Virus record (IMG/VR): IMGVR_UViG_3300032323_001214
Span: 124,001-188,000 of that record
DNA length: 64,000 nt
Reading direction: 5' to 3' (one strand)
Below are positions 41,996 to 50,288 of this stretch, piece after piece. The notes under the pieces are model-generated. The model was not told where the DNA came from. It saw only the letters and a list, made by a program, of their open reading frames with translations, and did not search any database. How positions within the stretch are numbered: the first letter of the stretch is position 1; the number at the start of each line of letters is the position of its first letter. The position numbers and the translations under genes were made by a program.

Positions 41996-42557
41996 TGAGA
42001 AGTTTGAAGGGCAAGACTTCAATTTGTTTGAAGCACTTGCAGCCATGGATCGAAAAGATTATGGGTACTATGATAGACTAACAGAAGAACAACAGAAAAA
42101 GTTTGTACCGTATATGATGACTCATTGGATGAGTGCTATTAAGGGCGCAGGTGATCTGCAAGGATACTATATACGTAGCACAGACCTTCATGCAAATAAA
42201 CATTTGTTCAATGAAAATATTCAGAAACATCCTAAACTACAATGGTATATGTTATGCACAATAAGCCCGGGATTAGGAAAACAAGATCATAAATGGGTAC
42301 CTCAACTGGGTGTAAGTATTCGCACTCTAAGAGAACCTGCTAAACTAAAAGACGTTAAGGAATATTTTACTAAAATTTATCCTAAAGCAAATATAGACGA
42401 TATTGCAGAATTTGCAAATTCATTTGTAGCAGACCATAAAAAAAAATGTTATCTAGCTACAACATATCCTAATCTAAAACAAAGCGACATTGAAGTTTTA
42501 TCACAACTGATAACAAATGAAGATATTAAACAGTATGAAAAAGAAAGAGGAAATTGA
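41967..42557 (+). CDS. Possible gp62-like clamp-loader small subunit
   Basis: FVPYMMTHWMS...NKH...HPKLQWYML...KW pattern loosely resembles gp62. Confidence 0.4.
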   Translation: MATKKNTPTDEKFEGQDFNLFEALAAMDRKDYGYYDRLTEEQQKKFVPYMMTHWMSAIKGAGDLQGYYIRSTDLHANKHLFNENIQKHPKLQWYMLCTISPGLGKQDHKWVPQLGVSIRTLREPAKLKDVKEYFTKIYPKANIDDIAEFANSFVADHKKKCYLATTYPNLKQSDIEVLSQLITNEDIKQYEKERGN

Positions 42558-43239
42558 TAAAGCAGAAGTATTCGGGTGTGAATTCTGCAACAGAGAATTC
42601 CTACGAAAATCTACTGTAATTAAACATCTATGCGAAAATAAACAACGCTGGTTAAACAAAGACCTTCAAGGTAATCGTTTGGGTTTTCAATCTTGGTTGC
42701 AATTTTATAAAAAGAATACTGCAAGTAAGAAAAACAAAACTTACGAAGAATTTATTCGTAGTGCATATTATAGTGCTTTTGTAAAGTTTGGTAATTACTG
42801 TGTAGACGTTAATGTTATCAATGTCAGTAGATATGCAGATTGGTTACTAAAGAATCAAATTAGTATTGACACATGGACAAAAGATACAAATTATACAAAA
42901 TTTCTAATTGAGTATATACGCAGCGAAGATCCACTGGATGCAATCGCTAGAAGTATTCAAACAACGATTGACCTTGCTCAAATTGAACAGATACAAAGTA
43001 AAGATTATTTGCGTTATGGTAATGTAAATAAAATATGCTATGAGATTACTAAGGGAAAAATTAATCCATGGATTTTATATCAGTCTGAAAGTGGTTTGAA
43101 ATTTTTAGATAGTTTAAATGAATCTCATGTTGCTATGATAATCGACTATATTAATCCAGAATTGTGGAAGATCAAGTTCAATCGTGAACCCGAGAATGTT
43201 AAACAAGTCAAGGAGTTGTTGAATGCCGGCGGGTACTAG
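42535..43239 (+). CDS. Zn-finger-containing hypothetical protein
   Basis: CEFC..F.....HLC near the N-terminus. Confidence 0.7.
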   Translation: MKKKEEIDKAEVFGCEFCNREFLRKSTVIKHLCENKQRWLNKDLQGNRLGFQSWLQFYKKNTASKKNKTYEEFIRSAYYSAFVKFGNYCVDVNVINVSRYADWLLKNQISIDTWTKDTNYTKFLIEYIRSEDPLDAIARSIQTTIDLAQIEQIQSKDYLRYGNVNKICYEITKGKINPWILYQSESGLKFLDSLNESHVAMIIDYINPELWKIKFNREPENVKQVKELLNAGGY

Positions 43240-43408
43240 AGTTCGTATTCCTTGGCTAAGAAATGACTGGAATGTAGCCTGCGCCTGGGCAATAGAACAG
43301 TATGGATTGCCTGATGCGAGATTTACCACACAACCAAGTGATGAAGGAATGGATTTCTATTTTGCAGATGAACGTGACGCTATTTTATTTGAGTTGACTT
43401 GGGGATGA
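43223..43408 (+). CDS. Small FxL(K/R)W-family protein
   Basis: Ends FYFADERDAILFELTWG. Confidence 0.75.
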   Translation: MPAGTRVRIPWLRNDWNVACAWAIEQYGLPDARFTTQPSDEGMDFYFADERDAILFELTWG

Positions 43409-43620
43409 AACAAGTAACTCTATACATTGATGTTAATAAAACACTACAAATAGTCAGTGAATTAAAACAAATGGGTTGGGTTACTGGTATAGATTTTGAT
43501 TTTGCCTATAATAAAGCAGTTTGGGATGGTTTTAGTTCAGGTCTCAACCAAGAGCAACATTGTGTGTTCACTTTTTATAATGATAGTAATGCTAGTTATT
43601 TTATGTTGAGGTGGGGATGA
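43405..43620 (+). CDS. Small FxL(K/R)W-family protein
   Basis: Ends FTFYNDSNASYFMLRWG. Confidence 0.75.
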   Translation: MKQVTLYIDVNKTLQIVSELKQMGWVTGIDFDFAYNKAVWDGFSSGLNQEQHCVFTFYNDSNASYFMLRWG

Positions 43621-43865
43621 AACATCATCTAGAATATTATGATTGGACTAGGGGTTGGGAAGATGACCACCCTTACTGGTATATTCATGATGTAGTTGCC
43701 CAAAATCAAACTGAACTAGATTTATTACATAAAGAAGTAGTACATTGGCTATATAAAAATACAGATAACCCAGAGAGACATTGCCGTTGGACTAGACAAG
43801 TATTGACTATTAGTGTAAAATTCAGACATGAGCGGGATTACTTGTGGTTTAAATTGAGATTTTGA
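43617..43865 (+). CDS. Small FxL(K/R)W-family protein
   Basis: Ends VKFRHERDYLWFKLRF. Confidence 0.75.
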   Translation: MKHHLEYYDWTRGWEDDHPYWYIHDVVAQNQTELDLLHKEVVHWLYKNTDNPERHCRWTRQVLTISVKFRHERDYLWFKLRF

Positions 43866-44113
43866 TGACATTAGAAAATGAAATATTAGACAAATTGGCG
43901 GATGATATGGCAAAAGAAATGGACTATGATATGCTTTCTGAATTGTTAAACTGGACAAAAGTTGAACTGCCGCCGTTTACTGATAGATATAGTGCTATTG
44001 ATATTGCTGAATGGTGCAATGATAACTGTACAGGTAAGTTTATGAGTTTTGGCGTTAAGTTTGCGTTTGAAAAAAGTAAAGATGCTGAGTGGTTCATCCT
44101 GAGATGGAAATGA
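43865..44113 (+). CDS. Small FxL(K/R)W-family protein
   Basis: Ends FAFEKSKDAEWFILRWK. Confidence 0.75.
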   Translation: MTLENEILDKLADDMAKEMDYDMLSELLNWTKVELPPFTDRYSAIDIAEWCNDNCTGKFMSFGVKFAFEKSKDAEWFILRWK

Positions 44114-44439
44114 AAAATCAATGGAACCGAAGCATTGTATGGAATATTGACAACGATATTGTATTAGGTAAAGACGGAAGTTATTATTTACGCTGGGGCG
44201 ACAAGGAGAAGAAATTGGATTACACTATTGTTACAGACGGAGCAGATTGCTATCCATGGACAGAAACATTTGTTATCTGGCCAAGAAGAAGTATCAGTGG
44301 TGCACCTCTATTCTTTACTAAAGCATACAAGCGTAAAGTTTGGGTAATATGGGGTAGAGGCTTTCATATGGAGCCTGAAACTCAATATGCAACATTATTT
44401 GATTTATTAACACATGGCGATCAAAATACCTTTACTTAA
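44110..44439 (+). CDS. Hypothetical protein with an internal YYLRWG motif
   Basis: ATGA-coupled; the family motif sits at about residue 30. Confidence 0.65.
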   Translation: MKNQWNRSIVWNIDNDIVLGKDGSYYLRWGDKEKKLDYTIVTDGADCYPWTETFVIWPRRSISGAPLFFTKAYKRKVWVIWGRGFHMEPETQYATLFDLLTHGDQNTFT

Positions 44440-44635
44440 TAATTTGACAGGAGAGCAAGAACAGTGGCTTGCTAAGAATGTGGGTCCACGTATGCACTAT
44501 CTTCATAATAGTATTGGCGGACAAGGATGGATTGCCAAACATGAATGGGATCCGGGTTTGGTAAACAAACGATGGTATCTCACTTTAGAAGATGAAAAAT
44601 TAGCTACATTCTTTACAATTAAGTTTTCATCATGA
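44414..44635 (+). CDS. Small FxL(K/R)W-family protein
   Basis: Ends LTLEDEKLATFFTIKFSS. Confidence 0.75.
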   Translation: MAIKIPLLNNLTGEQEQWLAKNVGPRMHYLHNSIGGQGWIAKHEWDPGLVNKRWYLTLEDEKLATFFTIKFSS

Positions 44636-44844
44636 TTCAAATTAAGTTATCAACCATGAAGCCTGATACGATACTAAACATAGTAAAGGAATTACGTTCC
44701 AAAGGGTACGTTCAGGGTATGGATTTTGATTTCGCTTATTATCAAAGCAATTGGGACGATTATATTGGAGAAATCCCTAGCGAAACTATCTTTACTTTTT
44801 ACAAAGACGAACTAGCTACATGGTTTGAACTACTATACAAATGA
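44632..44844 (+). CDS. Small FxL(K/R)W-family protein, close paralogue of 43405
   Basis: IVKELRSKGYVQGMDFDFAY versus IVSELKQMGWVTGIDFDFAY. Confidence 0.75.
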   Translation: MIQIKLSTMKPDTILNIVKELRSKGYVQGMDFDFAYYQSNWDDYIGEIPSETIFTFYKDELATWFELLYK

Positions 44845-45116
44845 GTAAAATACCTAAAGATTTTCAAGATTACGATGACGATGATCCTAATATAGAACAA
44901 CGTAAAAAACGATGGGACTATTGGGCGGCATTAAAACTTGTGCGTAGAGAATATCAGGAACAAAACAAATATACAGATTTTGATGCATATGATTTTGAAG
45001 ATTACCTTGAAGGTAAGTACGGTGTAAAGATGAATATAGTCAATGGTAACATAACAGATGGTTATCAGATAGTAGACGAGAAGAAATACCTAATATTTTT
45101 ATTAAAATTCCAATGA
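44841..45116 (+). CDS. Small FxL(K/R)W-family protein
   Basis: Ends IVDEKKYLIFLLKFQ. Confidence 0.75.
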   Translation: MSKIPKDFQDYDDDDPNIEQRKKRWDYWAALKLVRREYQEQNKYTDFDAYDFEDYLEGKYGVKMNIVNGNITDGYQIVDEKKYLIFLLKFQ

Positions 45117-45463
45117 ACAATTCACCCTTTGAATTATACACAACTGATTTTGGCAATCATGTGGTACACTGGCCTACATTTAAAAACATCAGAGATGTAG
45201 ATACTAGAATAAAATTCCTAGACATTTTGTTTGGAGAAGTAAAATGTTTTGAAGTAGGATTAGGTCTGTTGTTACAAGGCGGTGATCTTGACACATTGTG
45301 GATTAAATTTAGTGCTTGGGCACAAGATACTAATCATAGTTATAGTGAATACTTACAGGACATGTATGAGATTCGTGCTGTTGTGTTCCGAGACAAGACT
45401 GAAGCAATAAAGTTTCAAGACATACTAGAAAAGAAATACATATGGAAAATGTTAAAGGCATAA
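45113..45463 (+). CDS. Hypothetical protein
   Basis: ATGA-coupled; VVFRDKTEAIKF resembles the array motif. Confidence 0.7.
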   Translation: MNNSPFELYTTDFGNHVVHWPTFKNIRDVDTRIKFLDILFGEVKCFEVGLGLLLQGGDLDTLWIKFSAWAQDTNHSYSEYLQDMYEIRAVVFRDKTEAIKFQDILEKKYIWKMLKA

Positions 45464-45464
45464 T

Positions 45465-46028
45465 ATGGCAAATGATATAATGGTTGACATTGAAAGTTTA
45501 GATACAACACCTAACTGTGTTATCTTAACTATCGGTGCAGTAAGATTCGATCCTAAAGGTAGTGGTGTAGTTGAACGACTAGAATTACGACCTACTGTTG
45601 AGGATCAAACAGAGATTTACAATAGAAGCATCAACGAAGATACATTGCGTTGGTGGAGTGAGCAGAGTCCTGAGGCACTTGAAGAAGCTATGGGAGACAA
45701 TGGACGTATGCCATTTAAAGAATGTATGGAGATATTGTATAAGTTTTGTTGGAACCGTCGTGCTGTTTGGAGCAACGGTGCATCATTCGATTGTGTAGTG
45801 ATGGAACATGCTTGGAGACAAACAAGTGACAAGCCCAATCCTATTCCCTGGCCTTTCTGGACAGTTAGAGATACACGAACATTATATGAAATAACGGGTG
45901 TAAGTCTCAAAGATGGTGGGCATAGTACAAGTCACAAAGCAGTAGAAGATGCCGAACGACAAGCAATTGTTGTACAAAAAGCGTATACTAAACTAATTAA
46001 AGCAGAATTGGTAGCACTCCCAAGATGA
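45465..46028 (+). CDS. DEDDh 3'-5' exonuclease (Rv2179c-like)
   Basis: IMVDIESL, ILTIGAV.F, VWSNGASFD, RDTRT, HKAVEDA. Confidence 0.88.
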   Translation: MANDIMVDIESLDTTPNCVILTIGAVRFDPKGSGVVERLELRPTVEDQTEIYNRSINEDTLRWWSEQSPEALEEAMGDNGRMPFKECMEILYKFCWNRRAVWSNGASFDCVVMEHAWRQTSDKPNPIPWPFWTVRDTRTLYEITGVSLKDGGHSTSHKAVEDAERQAIVVQKAYTKLIKAELVALPR

Positions 46029-46609
46029 GAATAGATTCAGATATTGATATTGACTTTGGATCAAGGGATGACTTATTAAAGTTGATACCGCATACAGCAG
46101 CGGCAATGCGTAATGTTACTCCAAATCGTAAACATGCTACTGGTGTGTATGTTACCGATATACCATACGATCCAATCAATGATATGGCAAGTATTGATTA
46201 CACTGAAGCAGATAAACGAGGATACTTTAAACTTGACTTGTTAAATGTACATGTTTACAGTCAAGTACGTGATGAAATGCACTTAATCGAATTGATGGGA
46301 GATCCAGATTGGTCGCGCCTTAAAGATAAAAACTTTGTAGAGAAACTGATTCACTTGAACAATCAATATTATAATCTACAAAAGATGCCAGAACCGGTGG
46401 ACAGTATCCCAAGATTAGCTATGTTCTTAGCTGTTATAAGACCGGGCAAGAAGCATCTGATAGGAAAAAACTGGGTTGAAGTTGCAAAAACTGTATGGGA
46501 TAAAGGTACAGATGGGTATACATTCAAAAAAAGTCATAGTCTTGCCTACAGTCAATTAGTAGTAGTTCACATGAATTTATTATGTGAGCAGGAACGTAAA
46601 GGTATATGA
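46025..46609 (+). CDS. Minimal DnaE (Pol III alpha)-like catalytic core
   Basis: DIDIDF, KHATGVYV, GYFKLDLL, LAVIRPG, GYTFKKSHSLAY. Confidence 0.85.
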   Translation: MRIDSDIDIDFGSRDDLLKLIPHTAAAMRNVTPNRKHATGVYVTDIPYDPINDMASIDYTEADKRGYFKLDLLNVHVYSQVRDEMHLIELMGDPDWSRLKDKNFVEKLIHLNNQYYNLQKMPEPVDSIPRLAMFLAVIRPGKKHLIGKNWVEVAKTVWDKGTDGYTFKKSHSLAYSQLVVVHMNLLCEQERKGI

Positions 46610-46990
46610 TTACAAGAGGCGTTTAACTAACGTGATACTACGGCGTTTAGATCGCCTTTTGTTAAGATCGCTTATACTGCACGTGGGCCCGTGTAGTATA
46701 GTTAAACTTTTGTTATTGAATGTTCTTAAATAAGGCTTGAAAATAGTCCATTCATCCTTGAGGAATAGATTGATAGGAATTAGTCTATTAGATTCCCACC
46801 ACCATATATCACCCAATTCTAAGAATTTTTCTCTAACAATAGTATCTACAATAGAACCATAGTCGTATATAGTGGTGACAATATCATCTCTATTCTGTAC
46901 TATTCCAACATAGTCTTGGTTGGCGTATGAACAGATAGTGATAAACGGGTGATTTTCGCTTAGTTTCTTGAAAAAATCGTTTTGAATCAT
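46610..46990 (-). CDS. Hypothetical protein, opposite strand
   Basis: ATG at 46990 lies 8 nt after a minus-strand GTAAATA; divergent from the 47057 gene. Confidence 0.75.
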   Translation of the reverse strand: MIQNDFFKKLSENHPFITICSYANQDYVGIVQNRDDIVTTIYDYGSIVDTIVREKFLELGDIWWWESNRLIPINLFLKDEWTIFKPYLRTFNNKSLTILHGPTCSISDLNKRRSKRRSITLVKRLL

Positions 46991-47056
46991 TATTGTTGTA
47001 TTTACCGAAATATTTATCATAGGATTAAACAGTATTATATTTTGATAAATATGACT

Positions 47057-47830
47057 ATGTATTCAACTCAAGTTTTCGTCTATACACAGCGACAGATCGT
47101 TGTACTTTTAACCGGATTTTCACCTAGGAGCTATATGCCTCAGTATGCCAAGCCATTAACTCTACACAAGGGTGTAGACAATCAAATTCAATTTCAGTTC
47201 TTAAATCAGGAACAAAAACCTGTCAATATTACAGGTAAATCTATTACATGCCGTATCATCAATTCGCAAGGTAATGCAACACTTATTCAAAAGGCTTTAA
47301 CTTTGCAATTGCCGGCTACTGGTATTGCTAGTTTATACCTAAATGCTGCTGATATTGAAAATATTGACACACAAAAAGCATACTATTCACTGGAGATTCC
47401 TACAGGAGAATTTGACTTCCCCGTGTTTGTAGACCAAAATGCAGGAGCACGTGGTGATATGAATATTGTCAACAGCGTTCTACCTAGTTTTGTTCCTAGT
47501 TATCCTGTTACTATTCCAACTGGCCAACCTTTCCCTAATTTAGATCCTAACGCCAATTCAAGTAGCAATTCTCAAACTTATTATACCAGTGTGATTTCAT
47601 CGGATGACAATCCTATCATGACTTTCCAAGCAACATATACAGATTATTATGGGAATGTTTTAGTAGAAGGTTCTACAATACCCGATGGTGACTGGTATCC
47701 AATTCTAGCGGATACTGGGTATAGCAATGTCAATGATACTAAAGGGTATGTTATTAACGGATATCACCCATATGTCCGAATTCAATTTGAAAGTAACGTC
47801 GGTGCAGTAACTAATGTATTGGTAAGATAA
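47057..47830 (+). CDS. Virion structural protein (Ig/BppU-N-like beta domains)
   Basis: Late promoter 5 nt upstream; L.LHKGVDNQIQFQFLNQEQKPVNIT; beta-rich. Confidence 0.55.
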   Translation: MYSTQVFVYTQRQIVVLLTGFSPRSYMPQYAKPLTLHKGVDNQIQFQFLNQEQKPVNITGKSITCRIINSQGNATLIQKALTLQLPATGIASLYLNAADIENIDTQKAYYSLEIPTGEFDFPVFVDQNAGARGDMNIVNSVLPSFVPSYPVTIPTGQPFPNLDPNANSSSNSQTYYTSVISSDDNPIMTFQATYTDYYGNVLVEGSTIPDGDWYPILADTGYSNVNDTKGYVINGYHPYVRIQFESNVGAVTNVLVR

Positions 47831-47869: not shown

Positions 47870-48850
47870 ATGTTTGATATTCTATCAATAATTCCCGGTA
47901 AGAAAAAACTCACACAAGGTGGATGGCACAGCTTCAATGCTGTATGCTGTAACCATCGTGGGCACAAGATCGACACCCGTAGTCGAGGTGGTGTGAAGTT
48001 TGACGGACAAACAAATTGGTCGTATCATTGTTTTAATTGTGGGTTCAAATGTGGGTTTAGTTTAGGTAAGAGTTTATCAAAGAACACACGACAATTACTA
48101 TTATGGTCTGGAGTTGATGATACGCAAATTAGTAAGTGGAGTTTAGAAAGTTTACAACAAAAAGATATACTAGACTTTACTAAGCCTAAAAAGAAAATTA
48201 AGATTAAGTTTGATGAACACAAGTTACCCGAAGATGCAGAACTACTTGATAAAAATAATACCTTACACAAAAAATATGTAGACTATCTGGAAGCGAGAGG
48301 TATAAGTAGTAGTGAATATCCCTTCATGGTCACACCCAACGAACCAAGTCGCATGGGAAATCGCATCATTATTCCCTATACGTACAAAAATAAGATTGTT
48401 GGTCACACTAGTAGATTCTTAGATAATAAGATTCCAAAATATATCAATGAACAACAGCCTGGTTATGTATTTGGATATGATTTTCAACAACCTCAACAAA
48501 GTGTTTGTATTCTAGTCGAGGGCATTTTTGATGCACTAAGTCTAGGCGCTTGTGCATTAACTCATAATACAATTAATGATGATCAAGCAGAACTACTAGC
48601 ACAACTTAACAGACAAATCATCTTTGTCCCCGACCGTGATAAAACAGGATTTGATTCTTGTGACAGGGCTATTCAACTAGGCTATAGTGTTAGCATTCCT
48701 AATTGGGGGAGTGATGTAAAAGACGTTAATGATGCCGTTGTCAAATATGGCAGACTACCTACACTACTCAGTATATTACGGTCTGCAACGATGAGCAAAA
48801 TTAAAATAGAAATACAAAGGAAGAAAATTGCAAAACAAAACGGATTCTAA
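47870..48850 (+). CDS. gp61: DNA primase (gp61-like)
   Basis: Zn-binding CC.H...HCFNC, RIIIPY, KY, TOPRIM VEGIFDAL, PDRD, KDVND. Confidence 0.92.
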   Translation: MFDILSIIPGKKKLTQGGWHSFNAVCCNHRGHKIDTRSRGGVKFDGQTNWSYHCFNCGFKCGFSLGKSLSKNTRQLLLWSGVDDTQISKWSLESLQQKDILDFTKPKKKIKIKFDEHKLPEDAELLDKNNTLHKKYVDYLEARGISSSEYPFMVTPNEPSRMGNRIIIPYTYKNKIVGHTSRFLDNKIPKYINEQQPGYVFGYDFQQPQQSVCILVEGIFDALSLGACALTHNTINDDQAELLAQLNRQIIFVPDRDKTGFDSCDRAIQLGYSVSIPNWGSDVKDVNDAVVKYGRLPTLLSILRSATMSKIKIEIQRKKIAKQNGF

Positions 48851-50288
48851 GAAGCAGATTGATTACACACCGGAAGTACAAAAGCTTTTTTTAAGAATGA
48901 TGATGACTAACGCTGAGTTATATACTCGGGTTATGAACATTATGAATAGCGAAAACTTTGACAAAAGCCTGCGCCCAGTTGCAGATATGTTCAAAGAACA
49001 CACAGACAAATACAAAGTATTACCTGATGTAAATCAAGTTAAAGCTATGACAGGTGTAGAGATAGAACCTATTCCTGAGATGAGCGAAGGTCACAGTGAA
49101 TGGTTCTTTGATGCATTTGAATCATTTACAAAAAGACAAGAACTAGAACGAGCTATTCTTAAAGCGGCTGACTTACTTGAGAAAGGTGACTTTAGTCCTG
49201 TTGAAAAACTAATCAAAGATGCAGTGCAGATTAGTCTACAGCGAGACATGGGTACCGATTATTTCTTTGACCCTAAAGGTCGTATTAACAAATACTTCAA
49301 TGCAGGCGGACAAGTCTCGACAGGCTGGCCGCAAATGGATCGTATCTTGTATGGTGGCATGAGTCGAGGTGAACTCAACATCTTTGCAGGTGGTTCGGGT
49401 TCAGGCAAATCTCTTGTTATGATGAACATTGCATTGAACTGGTTACAGACAGGTATGAGCGGTGTATACATCACACTTGAATTGAGTGAGGAGCTAACAT
49501 CACTGCGTACTGATGCTATGTTGACACAGATGGGCACGAAGTCAATTCGCAAAGACATTGATACTACCGATCTTAAAGTTAAGATGGTAGGTAAGAAGTC
49601 TGGTAAGTATCGTGTTAAAGGATTGCCCGCACAAAGTAATGTGAATGATATTCGTGCTTATCTTAAAGAAGTGCAGATTCAAACAGGTATTAAAATTGAC
49701 TTTGTTATGGTGGACTATCTTGATTTGGTTATGCCTGTTTCTGTTAAAGTTAATCCTAACGATCAGTTCATCAAGGACAAGTATGTTGCAGAAGAATTGC
49801 GTAACTTGGCAAAAGAGATGGGTATCTTATTAGTGACAGCAAGTCAGTTGAATCGTAGCGCGGTTGATGAAATTGAATTCGATCATAGTCACATTGCAGG
49901 TGGTATCAGTAAGATTAACACTGCTGACAACGTGTTTGGTATTTTCACAAGTCGTAGTATGCGTGAACGCGGTAAGTATCAGATTCAATGTATGAAAAGT
50001 CGCAGTTCAACTGGTGTAGGTATGAAGATTGATTTAGATTACGACATTGAAACAATGCGTATCAGTGACAGTGATCCTGATGGCTATGCTGACCAACAAG
50101 CAAAATACAGACCCTCCCCTAGCCCAACCGACATTATGAAACAAGTAAAAACACAATCAACATTAGTATCATCAGATCCTATCATAAATCAAGCTACAGG
50201 AGAGATATTAGAACCGGAAAACAAGCGTATTATAGCAGATGTTCAGAGTAATAAACTCAAATCTCTGCTTAATTCTTTAAAGAAATAA
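48828..50288 (+). CDS. gp41: Replicative DnaB-like helicase (gp41-like)
   Basis: STGW..MD, AGGSGSGKS, TLELSE, VDYLDL, TASQLNR, KSR. Confidence 0.94.
   Translation: MQNKTDSKKQIDYTPEVQKLFLRMMMTNAELYTRVMNIMNSENFDKSLRPVADMFKEHTDKYKVLPDVNQVKAMTGVEIEPIPEMSEGHSEWFFDAFESFTKRQELERAILKAADLLEKGDFSPVEKLIKDAVQISLQRDMGTDYFFDPKGRINKYFNAGGQVSTGWPQMDRILYGGMSRGELNIFAGGSGSGKSLVMMNIALNWLQTGMSGVYITLELSEELTSLRTDAMLTQMGTKSIRKDIDTTDLKVKMVGKKSGKYRVKGLPAQSNVNDIRAYLKEVQIQTGIKIDFVMVDYLDLVMPVSVKVNPNDQFIKDKYVAEELRNLAKEMGILLVTASQLNRSAVDEIEFDHSHIAGGISKINTADNVFGIFTSRSMRERGKYQIQCMKSRSSTGVGMKIDLDYDIETMRISDSDPDGYADQQAKYRPSPSPTDIMKQVKTQSTLVSSDPIINQATGEILEPENKRIIADVQSNKLKSLLNSLKK

What the first reader, a model, noticed from the sequence alone, without database searches (positions are those of the whole stretch)
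45465..46609. 194-aa minimal C-family polymerase core coupled to a separate exonuclease
Seen: the three catalytic aspartate positions (DIDID, KLDLL) and the KH..G, RPG and F.KSH..AY motifs are kept in order, but without PHP, clamp-binding or OB domains. In E. coli DnaE these motifs span roughly twice this length. A DEDDh exonuclease gene is ATGA-coupled upstream, and primase and helicase lie 1.3 kb downstream. Known: T4-like phages normally use a B-family gp43; none is in this window. Inference: a split replicase subunit, or a stripped-down nucleotidyltransferase with another job.
Basis: partly seen in the sequence, partly recalled or inferred. Interest (0 to 1): 0.7.

Follow-up and report, generated by a model that had tools for sequence, protein, structure and literature searches.

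The report
Half of a split mini polymerase
The 194-residue gene is the C-terminal half of a split, stripped-down bacterial-type (Pol III alpha-like) DNA polymerase that was described by comparative genomics in 2021 for Rak2/PA5oct-like jumbo phages; this uncultured freshwater phage is a new member, and it also has an ordinary T4-type polymerase outside the window.

Summary
ORF 46025-46609 (194 aa) carries, in order, the Pol III alpha motifs DxDxD, KH..G, KxD, RPG and Y.FKKSH. Its confident model (pLDDT 96) aligns end to end with E. coli alpha residues 397-784, twice its length, and with PolC. It is not a complete core. The NTP-binding part (GVGRGSS, matching E. coli 278-394) is a separate 169-aa gene 45 kb downstream, outside the window. 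The break falls just before the DxD strand and there is no intein. The two halves co-occur in about 95 jumbo-phage records, are predicted to bind (0.90 against best control 0.24), and occur fused as one 375-aa protein in three metagenomic clusters. Iyer et al. 2021 (PMC7824862) already described this split minimal Pol III of group 2.2 jumbo phages, which accompanies a family B polymerase. That polymerase is present here (905 aa, with exonuclease domain) at contig position 235.8-238.5 kb. The upstream DEDDh exonuclease is DexA/Rv2179c-like. It sits in an insertion island found only in the close freshwater clade and is absent from four cultured relatives, so a polymerase-proofreader pair is poorly supported. 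Verdict: a new member of a known, biochemically untested kind, probably a distributive, dNTP-selective accessory DNA polymerase.

The parts
46025..46609 (+). C-terminal half (194 aa) of the split minimal Pol III alpha-like polymerase. It carries the catalytic D6/D8 and D71, K69, the R139-P140-G141 template contact, and the Y165/F167/K169/S170/H171 helix-loop-helix with the sugar-gate histidine.
45465..46028 (+). DEDDh 3'-5' exonuclease of the Rv2179c/DexA-like family. Its stop overlaps the start of the polymerase half. It is a lineage-specific neighbour, not a family-wide partner.
   Evidence: PF16473 at 4.7e-33, phrog_255 at 6.2e-42. Relatives in 661 phage records, including T4-like dexA. Upstream of the C-half in 65 of 65 close IMG/VR loci, directly adjacent in 56. 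No match in the whole PA5oct, GAP32, Atu_ph07 and Vibrio 2.275.O records. Absent upstream in the outgroups.
43223..45463 (+). Island of nine small overlapping ORFs (61-116 aa) that, together with the exonuclease, is inserted between the conserved 240-aa gene and the polymerase half. Several share a C-terminal F.L(R/K)(W/F) tail.
   Evidence: ORF list. ORFs 43399-43620 and 44632-44844 are 43% identical, E 1.7e-14. The gap between the 240-aa gene and the C-half is 2.1-3.9 kb in close relatives, but the two genes abut or overlap in PA5oct and the nearest outgroups, with one or two short genes between them in the other three cultured relatives.
42517..43239 (+). Conserved 240-aa gene of unknown function (phrog_11058). 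Across the wider family it is the conserved upstream neighbour of the polymerase half.
   Evidence: phrog_11058 at 6e-58. tblastn finds it just upstream of the C-half in PA5oct, GAP32, Atu_ph07 and Vibrio 2.275.O. Genes of similar size lie directly upstream in the outgroups.
46610..47020 (-). Conserved convergent 136-aa gene of unknown function (phrog_11637) that abuts the 3' end of the polymerase half in every relative examined.
   Evidence: phrog_11637 at 1.2e-30. Present in the same position in four cultured relatives, in 79 of 80 IMG/VR loci, and behind the fused gene (E 2e-5). No lead from Pfam or the protein atlas.
47054..47830 (+). Homologue of a virion structural protein, part of the conserved gene block.
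   Evidence: phrog_1084 at 7.3e-14. The syntenic gene is annotated as a structural protein with MS evidence in PA5oct, and as a virion structural protein in GAP32 and Atu_ph07.
47870..48850 (+). DnaG-type primase (Toprim).
   Evidence: phrog_47 at 1e-37, PF13155 at 5.9e-5. Syntenic in all relatives.
48828..50288 (+). DnaB-like replicative helicase.
   Evidence: phrog_19 at 6.7e-68, PF03796 at 6.6e-19. Syntenic in all relatives.

Best explanation
ORF 46025-46609 is the C-terminal subunit of a two-piece, roughly 360-residue Pol III alpha-like (C-family) polymerase. This enzyme is typical of Rak2/PA5oct-like (group 2.2) jumbo phages.

The 169-aa N-terminal subunit is encoded 45 kb downstream, at contig C1:215009-215518, outside the window. 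It supplies the first palm strand with the R-G-S nucleotide-binding motif. The 194-aa subunit supplies:
- the metal-binding aspartates (D6, D8, D71);
- the essential primer-phosphate lysine (K69);
- the R-P-G template contact;
- the Tyr/Phe/Lys/Ser/His helix-loop-helix that roofs the nascent base pair and excludes ribonucleotides.

The two pieces assemble non-covalently, without an intein, into one Pol-beta-like nucleotidyltransferase domain.

Because the base-pair pocket and sugar gate are kept, the enzyme is most likely a template-directed, dNTP-selective DNA polymerase. Because the thumb, most of the index finger, PHP, clamp-binding and OB parts are gone, it is probably distributive. It would be an accessory enzyme beside the phage's own proofreading family B replicase.

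Its fixed place in a block with primase and DnaB helicase suggests a task at the primosome, such as extending primers. That last step is inference.

Shown: identity, fold, split point, partner gene, co-occurrence, purifying selection. Inferred: heterodimer formation (model only), polymerase activity, role.
For: Family and fold:
- phrog_11778 at 8.9e-56.
- 96 jumbo-phage records hold it at 38-45% identity.
- The family profile hits only Pol III alpha in the PDB, in three collinear segments: 399-418, 538-641 and 739-768 of E. coli alpha.
- AF2 pLDDT 96.
- The top 15 Foldseek hits are all Pol III alpha or C-family polymerase entries.

Partner:
- The only PF07733 match in the contig is a 169-aa ORF.
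- It matches phrog_11127 at 3.2e-36.
- The two halves therefore tile alpha 278-784, with the break at residues 394/397.

Co-occurrence:
- N-half in 95 and C-half in 96 phage records, of the same genera.
- N-half present in 4 of 5 large related contigs.

Natural fusions:
- P0285, P0391 and P0392 (375-376 aa) join both halves in one frame, and PF07733 spans the junction.
- The fused gene sits at the C-half locus.

Complex model:
- Score 0.90, best of 3 controls 0.24.
- The mark was reached by 58 of 80 solved complexes and 2 of 110 mismatched pairs. These counts hold only roughly because my own alignments were used.
- Runs agree in at least 97% of contacts, and the partner's pLDDT is at least 88.
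- The DxD strand (residues 1-12) touches the GVGRGSS loop (133-142).

Active-site residues are conserved. Their roles in E. coli alpha are given in bioRxiv 10.64898/2026.06.29.735100 and PMC8485763.

Selection: dN/dS 0.05-0.14.

Prior description: Iyer et al. 2021, PMC7824862.

Family B polymerase: present in this genome and in 5 of 5 relatives.
Against: - No biochemistry exists for any member. The held library yielded only the 2021 comparative-genomics paper.
- Missing parts may preclude templated synthesis. These are the thumb (minor-groove contacts) and the index-finger basic residues that touch the incoming dNTP in E. coli (R709, R710, K714, K715).
- The position of E. coli R390 is an invariant Glu in the N-half. 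In E. coli, the R390A mutation costs 27-fold in catalytic efficiency.
- The complex score may reflect the model's memory of intrachain packing in solved Pol III alpha structures rather than binding of these two chains (caveat).
- No RNA run was listed, so expression is not shown.
- The link to the primosome rests on conserved gene order alone.
Confidence: 0.85

Rival explanations
1. Polymerase-proofreader pair. The upstream DEDDh exonuclease would be the dedicated 3'-5' proofreading subunit of the mini polymerase, as epsilon is for alpha, and the ATGA overlap would ensure equimolar synthesis.
For: The exonuclease lies upstream of the C-half in 65 of 65 close relatives with enough flank, and directly abuts it in 56. 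A contig from an independent study bridges the junction. All five DEDDh residues are present and the PF16473 match is strong. The mini polymerase has no editing domain of its own.
Against: - No homologue was detected in the whole genomes of PA5oct, GAP32, Atu_ph07 or Vibrio phage 2.275.O, all of which have both polymerase halves.
- The nearest outgroups (53-57% identity) have the 240-aa gene directly upstream instead.
- The exonuclease belongs to the DexA-like family, found in 661 phage records; the listed hits are mostly small or T4-like phages and include none of the Rak2/PA5oct-like phages that carry the mini polymerase.
- It sits in a variable insertion island of 2.1-3.9 kb.
- 4-base overlaps are the norm in this gene row.
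- In bacteria, epsilon docks on the PHP domain, which is absent here.
Confidence: 0.12
2. A Pol-beta-fold nucleotidyltransferase with a non-replicative job. Examples are untemplated tailing, synthesis of a nucleotide signal, or handling of modified nucleotides. The Pol III scaffold would be reused without templated DNA synthesis.
For: - The thumb and the index-finger basic residues that grip DNA and dNTP in E. coli alpha are deleted.
- The R390 position is Glu.
- The phage already has a complete proofreading family B replicase.
- PA5oct DNA appears to carry a modified G (PMC12191111), so a specialised nucleotide enzyme is conceivable.
Against: The residues that contact the templating base (R139-P140) are nearly invariant across 96 diverse members, as is the sugar-gate histidine (H171). 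Those that stack on the incoming base (Y165, F167) are kept in most members: 73 of 96 each, F167 with 17 more Tyr. Such conservation is hard to explain without a templated dNTP substrate. The gene is locked in a block with primase and helicase in all relatives.
Confidence: 0.12
3. A decayed fragment of a full-length dnaE, or an assembly or frameshift artefact that splits one gene.
For: The protein is half the length of the matching stretch of DnaE. Pfam alone does not recognise it.
Against: - 374 clusters at 50% identity, and at least 7984 at 90%, nearly all 185-215 aa.
- dN/dS 0.05-0.14.
- The AF2 model is compact and very confident.
- No PHP or finger Pfam domain elsewhere in the contig.
- The other half is 45 kb away, at a comparable distance (about 34-53 kb) in PA5oct, GAP32 and three related contigs, though 182 kb in Atu_ph07.
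- The source run holds the stretch in one 41-kb contig with no differences.
Confidence: 0.01

Closest known systems
Split minimal DNA polymerase III alpha of group 2.2 jumbo phages (Iyer, Anantharaman, Krishnan, Burroughs, Aravind 2021, Viruses 13:63, PMC7824862)
   Same: - Two stand-alone proteins, an N-terminal NTP-binding one and a C-terminal Mg/template-binding one.
- The two genes lie far apart.
- A family B polymerase is present alongside.
- The same phage lineage: PA5oct, Rak2, GAP32, 121Q and Atu_ph07 are the cultured relatives at 38-45% identity.
   Different: Nothing essential differs. This is an uncultured freshwater member.

Added here, and not stated in the passages of that paper that I read:
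- the exact break (E. coli alpha 394/397);
- three natural unsplit 375-aa forms;
- a supportive complex model;
- retention of the Y754/H760-type base-pair pocket;
- a clade-specific DexA-like exonuclease inserted upstream.
Bacterial C-family replicases DnaE (E. coli, Thermus, M. tuberculosis) and PolC (Geobacillus)
   Same: - Pol-beta-like palm with D401/D403/D555 equivalents.
- K553 and the GS motif (supplied in trans).
- The R639-P640-G641 template contact.
- The Y754...H760 helix-loop-helix.
   Different: - About 360 residues in two chains, against 1160 in one.
- No PHP domain.
- No thumb: about 120 residues are replaced by about 30.
- About 97 residues of the index finger are missing, including R709/R710/K714/K715.
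- No clamp-binding, HhH, OB or tau-binding parts.
- The R390 position is Glu.
- The N-half carries a 72-residue N-terminal extension with no DnaE counterpart.
Bacillus subtilis DnaE working beside PolC (from my own knowledge: DnaE extends RNA primers and hands off to PolC)
   Same: A C-family polymerase acting as a second, non-main polymerase next to a different replicase. Here the gene is linked to primase and helicase.
   Different: This is a functional analogy only and was not tested. The main replicase here is family B, not PolC. The mini enzyme lacks clamp binding.
Cyanobacterial split DnaE joined by a split intein (from my own knowledge)
   Same: A dnaE-type catalytic subunit encoded in two distant genes.
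   Different: There are no intein fragments here. The N-half ends at the E. coli 394 equivalent and the C-half starts at 397, leaving no spare residues. Assembly must therefore be non-covalent. The split site also differs.
T4 DexA / Rv2179c-like DEDDh exonucleases (PF16473)
   Same: The upstream gene is a full-length member with all DEDDh residues. T4-like dexA genes are among its tblastn hits.
   Different: Here it abuts a polymerase half, but only within one freshwater clade.

Membership tests
C-family DNA polymerase catalytic core (Pol III alpha / PolC) | Pol-beta-like palm with three catalytic carboxylates (E. coli D401, D403, D555) | tested here: met
C-family DNA polymerase catalytic core (Pol III alpha / PolC) | GS nucleotide-binding motif (R362-G363-S364) on the first palm strand | tested here: not met
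   Absent from the 194-aa ORF. It is present as R137-G138-S139 (36/36) in the separate 169-aa N-half at C1:215009-215518. The feature is therefore met only by the two-protein unit.
C-family DNA polymerase catalytic core (Pol III alpha / PolC) | Essential lysine before the third aspartate (K553), the R639-P640-G641 template contact, and the Y754/F756/K758/S759/H760 helix-loop-helix with the sugar gate | tested here: met
   K69 96/96; R139 95/96; P140 96/96; Y165 73/96; F167 73/96 plus 17 Tyr; K169 78/96 plus 13 Arg; S170 73/96 plus 16 Ala; H171 94/96.
C-family DNA polymerase catalytic core (Pol III alpha / PolC) | PHP domain N-terminal to the palm | tested here: not met
   No PF02811 match anywhere in the 249.6-kb contig, while 14 of 14 control genomes ring. 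The N-half starts at the E. coli 278 equivalent, preceded by an unrelated 72-residue extension. The contig is estimated 67% complete.
C-family DNA polymerase catalytic core (Pol III alpha / PolC) | Thumb domain, full fingers, clamp-binding motif and OB domain | tested here: not met
   194 residues align across 388 of E. coli alpha. The segments 419-537 and 642-738 are unmatched, and the protein ends at about residue 784. No PF17657 match in the contig.
C-family DNA polymerase catalytic core (Pol III alpha / PolC) | Template-directed DNA polymerase activity | not testable with these tools
   Needs expression of both halves and primer-extension assays.
Split minimal Pol III alpha of group 2.2 jumbo phages (Iyer et al. 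2021) | Two stand-alone proteins (N-terminal NTP-binding, C-terminal Mg/template-binding) encoded by distant genes | tested here: met
   C-half at C1:170025-170609 and N-half at C1:215009-215518, 45 kb apart. phrog_11778 and phrog_11127.
Split minimal Pol III alpha of group 2.2 jumbo phages (Iyer et al. 2021) | Accompanies a family B DNA polymerase in the same genome | tested here: met
   905-aa ORF with PF00136 at 1.9e-39 and PF03104 at 9.9e-23, at C1:235793-238510. Homologues in 5 of 5 relatives.
Split minimal Pol III alpha of group 2.2 jumbo phages (Iyer et al. 2021) | Kinship with the Rak2/PA5oct/GAP32/Atu_ph07 jumbo myoviruses | tested here: met
   All 96 (C-half) and nearly all 95 (N-half) phage records holding the halves are jumbo phages of these lineages. 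The 240-aa gene, C-half, convergent gene, structural gene, primase and helicase come in the same order, with one or two short genes before the C-half in three of the four.
Split minimal Pol III alpha of group 2.2 jumbo phages (Iyer et al. 2021) | The halves reconstitute one enzyme | tested here: inconclusive
   The model supports binding: score 0.90, best control 0.24; the mark was reached by 58 of 80 solved complexes and 2 of 110 mismatched pairs (roughly, since my own alignments were used); contacts agree in at least 97%; partner pLDDT at least 88. Natural fusions exist. A model and a fusion are not a measurement.
alpha-epsilon type polymerase-proofreader pair | Exonuclease partner conserved wherever the polymerase occurs, docking on the polymerase | tested here: not met
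   The exonuclease is present beside the C-half only in the clade at 79% identity or more. No match was found in four cultured relatives' genomes (which has no positive control), and it is absent beside the C-half in three outgroup contigs. The PHP docking domain is absent. Binding itself was not tested.
Intein-split DnaE | Split-intein fragments at the C-terminus of the first piece and the N-terminus of the second | tested here: not met
   The N-half ends at the E. coli 394 equivalent and the C-half begins at 397, with no extra residues. In the natural fusion the two parts are joined by about 8 residues.

The most novel reading that the evidence does not exclude
The two-piece, roughly 360-residue enzyme would be the smallest active template-directed C-family DNA polymerase. 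It would work at the phage primosome, extending primase products before hand-off to the family B replicase. In the freshwater clade it would have recruited a DexA-like exonuclease as a trans-acting proofreader. The rare 375-aa fused forms would give a ready single-chain version for biochemistry and for asking what the ancestral Pol III module could do.
Probability: 0.15. Interest if true: 0.7.

Novelty: new member of a known kind. Interest (0 to 1): 0.4.

Why it matters
Family C polymerases are the bacterial replicases and are unrelated to the archaeal and eukaryotic ones, so how they arose is an open question. A natural enzyme reduced to the bare palm plus a stub of the fingers, and cut in two, shows which parts are dispensable. 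Iyer et al. proposed it as a picture of the ancestral module.

It has never been tested at the bench. The family is very abundant in freshwater and other metagenomes, with thousands of clusters. This report adds practical handles:
- the exact split point;
- the residues kept and those lost;
- a supportive heterodimer model;
- natural single-chain fusions that could be expressed directly.

It also removes a tempting but weak idea, the coupled proofreader. For the scan itself, the lesson is that the finding is real but already described, and that its key partner genes lie outside the window.

Tried and rejected
- **Pfam and single-sequence PDB search on the 194-aa protein.** Pfam found nothing. 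The PDB search gave only chance hits such as NarJ and phytase. Only the family profile and the fold reached Pol III alpha.
- **Co-aligning N-halves and C-halves onto the fused protein for one AF2 job.** MAFFT misplaced the N-halves on the C-terminal region in three attempts (A1, A2, A6). The fused protein was therefore not folded and the halves were folded separately.
- **Is the 200-aa gene upstream of the closest split relatives of the fused clade (L095) an adjacent N-half?** It is not.
- **Intein-mediated trans-splicing.** Rejected, because there are no spare residues at the break.
- **Decayed dnaE or assembly artefact.** Rejected.
- **Sole replicase replacing gp43.** Rejected, because a complete family B polymerase is present.
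- **Alignment-based scan of genome contigs.** It failed for lack of a conserved stretch. The single-protein scan found only three short MAG contigs, in line with a phage-restricted family, though that scan sees close relatives only.
- **RNA evidence.** No RNA run was listed, so co-transcription of the exonuclease and the C-half could not be examined.
- **Protein atlas search on the conserved convergent 136-aa gene.** No usable lead.
- **Exonuclease binding to the polymerase halves.** Not tested, because the single complex job went to the two halves.
Full report
**1. What is in the sequence**

The window is positions 124001-188000 of a 249,606-bp IMG/VR viral contig, estimated 67% complete. Sequencing runs that hold it are freshwater and lake metagenomes.

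- a 187-aa gene at 45465-46028;
- a 194-aa gene at 46025-46609.

The TGA stop of the first gene overlaps the ATG of the second.

The upstream protein is a full-length Rv2179c/DexA-like DEDDh exonuclease. It matches PF16473 at 4.7e-33. D8, E10, D109, H157 and D162 can be read from the sequence.

A DnaG-type primase starts 1.26 kb downstream at 47870, and a DnaB-like helicase follows at 48828.

The 4-base overlap is the local habit, not a mark of this pair. Four other junctions in the same row of + strand genes have it.

**2. The 194-aa protein is a genuine piece of a C-family polymerase**

Pfam does not see it. PHROGs does: phrog_11778, labelled 'DNA polymerase', at 8.9e-56 over the full length.

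A 96-sequence family alignment (A3) has:
- invariant K69, D71 and P140;
- near-invariant D6, D8, D10, H37, G40, R139, K142, K168 and H171.

A profile of that alignment hits nothing in the PDB except Pol III alpha chains. The match falls in three collinear pieces of E. coli alpha:
- 399-418 (PDFDVDF);
- 538-641 (KFDFLG ... RPG);
- 739-768 (GYGFNKSHSAAYAL).

|---|---|---|
| Thermus alpha | 459-841 | 9.6 |
| Geobacillus PolC | 968-1299 | 9.6 |
| M. tuberculosis DnaE1 | 416-811 | 9.3 |
| E. coli alpha | 397-784 | 8.2 |

The thumb (E. coli 419-537) and about 97 residues of the index finger (642-738) are missing, and the protein stops at about residue 784.

**3. It is only half of the core**

The Pol-beta-like fold needs a first strand with the GS motif (E. 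coli R362-G363-S364), which grips the incoming nucleotide. That strand is not in this ORF.

A search of the whole contig with PF07733 finds one match. It is a 169-aa ORF at C1:215009-215518, 45 kb downstream and outside the window. The evidence for it:
- PF07733 at 1.1e-7;
- phrog_11127 at 3.2e-36;
- an invariant GVGRGSS motif;
- its profile aligns to E. coli alpha 320-392;

The N-half ends ...DEFLKD and the C-half begins MRIDSDIDIDF. The two proteins therefore tile alpha 278-784, with the cut at 394/397, just before the DxD strand. There is no room for intein fragments.

The first 72 residues of the N-half have no DnaE counterpart.

**4. The two halves belong together**

- In the phage collection the C-half is in 96 records and the N-half in 95. 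Both sets are the same jumbo-phage genera: PA5oct-like Pseudomonas phages, the Rak2/121Q/GAP32/CBB group, Atu_ph07, Salicola SCTP-2 and Vibrio 2.275.O.
- In PA5oct the genes are 43.7 kb apart; here they are 45.0 kb apart.
- Four of five large related IMG/VR contigs hold the N-half too.
- The exhaustive representative search found 374 clusters at 50% identity, almost all 185-215 aa.
- One 375-aa protein, P0285, is a natural fusion. Its residues 75-181 match the N-half (35% identity, E 2e-13) and residues 190-370 match the C-half (40%, E 4e-38). PF07733 runs across the junction.
- Two more fused clusters (376 aa, 78-81% identical) come from other samples.
- The fused gene is followed by the same convergent small gene as in the window, so it sits at the C-half locus.
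- In a quick tree the three fusions form one clade (support 100) inside a 12-member clade (support 95) whose other nine members are split. This suggests a secondary fusion, but the root is not known.

A controlled complex prediction of the window's C-half with the N-half supports binding:
- score 0.90, best of 3 controls 0.24;
- the mark was reached by 58 of 80 solved complexes and 2 of 110 mismatched pairs. These counts hold only roughly because my own alignments were used;
- the runs agree in at least 97% of contacts, and the partner's pLDDT is at least 88;
- the DxD strand (residues 1-12) lies against the GVGRGSS loop (133-142).

Because the two chains correspond to neighbouring parts of solved single-chain enzymes, this pass may reflect likeness rather than independent evidence of binding.

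**5. Already described**

Iyer et al. [quoted passage not shown]

Every defining feature is met here. That includes the family B polymerase: a 905-aa ORF at C1:235793-238510, with PF00136 at 1.9e-39 and the exonuclease domain PF03104 at 9.9e-23. Homologues are present in all five relatives searched.

No other paper in the held library treats the enzyme. No biochemistry was found.

**6. What it probably does**

Recent E. coli Pol III structures (bioRxiv 10.64898/2026.06.29.735100) and dnaE genetics (PMC8485763) assign these roles:
- D401/D403/D555 bind the metals;
- K553 holds the primer phosphate, and K553A is dead;
- R639-P640-G641 touch the templating base;
- Y754 stacks on the incoming base;
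- H760 is the steric gate against ribonucleotides.

All have conserved equivalents here: D6/D8/D71, K69, R139-P140-G141, Y165 and H171, with F167, K169 and S170 alongside. That pattern is what a template-directed, dNTP-selective polymerase needs.

Lost features are:
- the thumb strands that track the minor groove;
- the index-finger residues R709, R710, K714 and K715;
- the PHP domain, with no PF02811 match in the contig;
- the clamp-binding, OB and tau-binding parts.

The R390 position is an invariant Glu.

I therefore expect a distributive enzyme that assists the family B replicase rather than replacing it.

The gene order is 240-aa gene, C-half, convergent 136-aa gene, virion protein, primase, DnaB helicase. 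It is kept in PA5oct, GAP32, Atu_ph07, the Vibrio phage and 80 IMG/VR loci, though in GAP32, Atu_ph07 and the Vibrio phage one or two short genes separate the 240-aa gene from the C-half. This points to a task at the primosome, such as primer extension. From my own knowledge, B. subtilis DnaE does this beside PolC. That is inference from gene order only.

The gene is under strong purifying selection, with dN/dS 0.05-0.14.

**7. The exonuclease**

Within the close clade (79-90% identity) the exonuclease is upstream of the C-half in all 65 loci with enough flank, and abuts it in 56. A contig from another study bridges the junction.

Outside that clade the link disappears:
- The four cultured relatives have no detectable homologue anywhere in their genomes. 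The search had no positive control.
- In the nearest outgroups (53-57% identity) a 208-240-aa gene, the same size as the window's 240-aa gene, directly abuts or overlaps the C-half.
- In the window clade the space between those two genes is a variable island of 2.1-3.9 kb. Here it holds nine small ORFs and the exonuclease.
- The exonuclease family is widespread in phages that lack the mini polymerase, including T4-like dexA.

A dedicated polymerase-proofreader pair is therefore poorly supported. It remains possible for this clade alone and was not tested by a complex model.

**8. Verdict**

It is wrong about the partner, about completeness and about the absence of gp43 from the phage.

This is a new, uncultured freshwater member of a kind described in 2021 and still untested at the bench. 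The additions with some value are:
- the exact split point;
- the inventory of kept and lost residues;
- the natural single-chain fusions;
- the supportive heterodimer model;
- the clade-restricted exonuclease insertion.

Noticed in passing
window 43223-45463 (+): Nine tightly packed small ORFs (61-116 aa) fill an insertion island between the conserved 240-aa gene and the exonuclease. Two of them (43399-43620 and 44632-44844) are clear paralogues (43% identity, E 1.7e-14). Most end in a similar F.L(R/K)(W/F)(G/K) tail. They have no Pfam or PHROG family. The island length varies from 2.1 to 3.9 kb among close relatives.
   Followed up: partly
window 46610-47020 (-): A 136-aa gene of unknown function (phrog_11637) converges on the 3' end of the polymerase half. 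It does so in every relative examined, including behind the fused 375-aa gene. It may be a functional partner. Pfam and the protein atlas gave no lead.
   Followed up: partly
L093:1066-2193 and L094:519-1649 (metagenomic contigs); proteins P0285, P0391, P0392: These are natural single-chain (unsplit) versions of the mini Pol III, 375-376 aa, in three clusters from different samples. In a quick tree they nest among split relatives.
   Followed up: yes
PA5oct NC_071039.1 216595-221815; Atu_ph07 NC_042013.1 211880-214846: The family B polymerase homologue matches in three separate pieces in PA5oct and in two separate open frames in Atu_ph07. Here it is one 905-aa ORF. This suggests inserted elements or split genes in those phages.
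   Followed up: no
G001 (contig of L072): C-half near 21 kb, N-half at 116153-116659: In this 303-kb relative the two halves lie about 95 kb apart on the minus strand, and the N-half is on the other side of the C-half compared with the other contigs. This points to a rearrangement or a different contig start.
   Followed up: no
L103:1210-1569: In one outgroup contig a ferredoxin-like (4Fe-4S) gene lies between the polymerase half and the convergent small gene.
   Followed up: no
protein P0348 (233 aa): This representative has the first 107 residues of the C-half followed by a pseudouridine synthase (PF00849) segment. It may be an assembly or gene-call chimera.
   Followed up: no
window 46602-46604: Contigs of related strains in three other samples show one base left out at 46602 and one put in behind 46604. 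This is a compensated shift confined to the last two codons of the polymerase half.
   Followed up: no
L097, L098, L099 (GTDB MAG contigs): The only matches among 185,579 species genomes are three short contigs binned into an archaeal (Natrialbaceae), an Elusimicrobia and a gammaproteobacterial MAG. They are most likely phage contigs that were binned by mistake.
   Followed up: no
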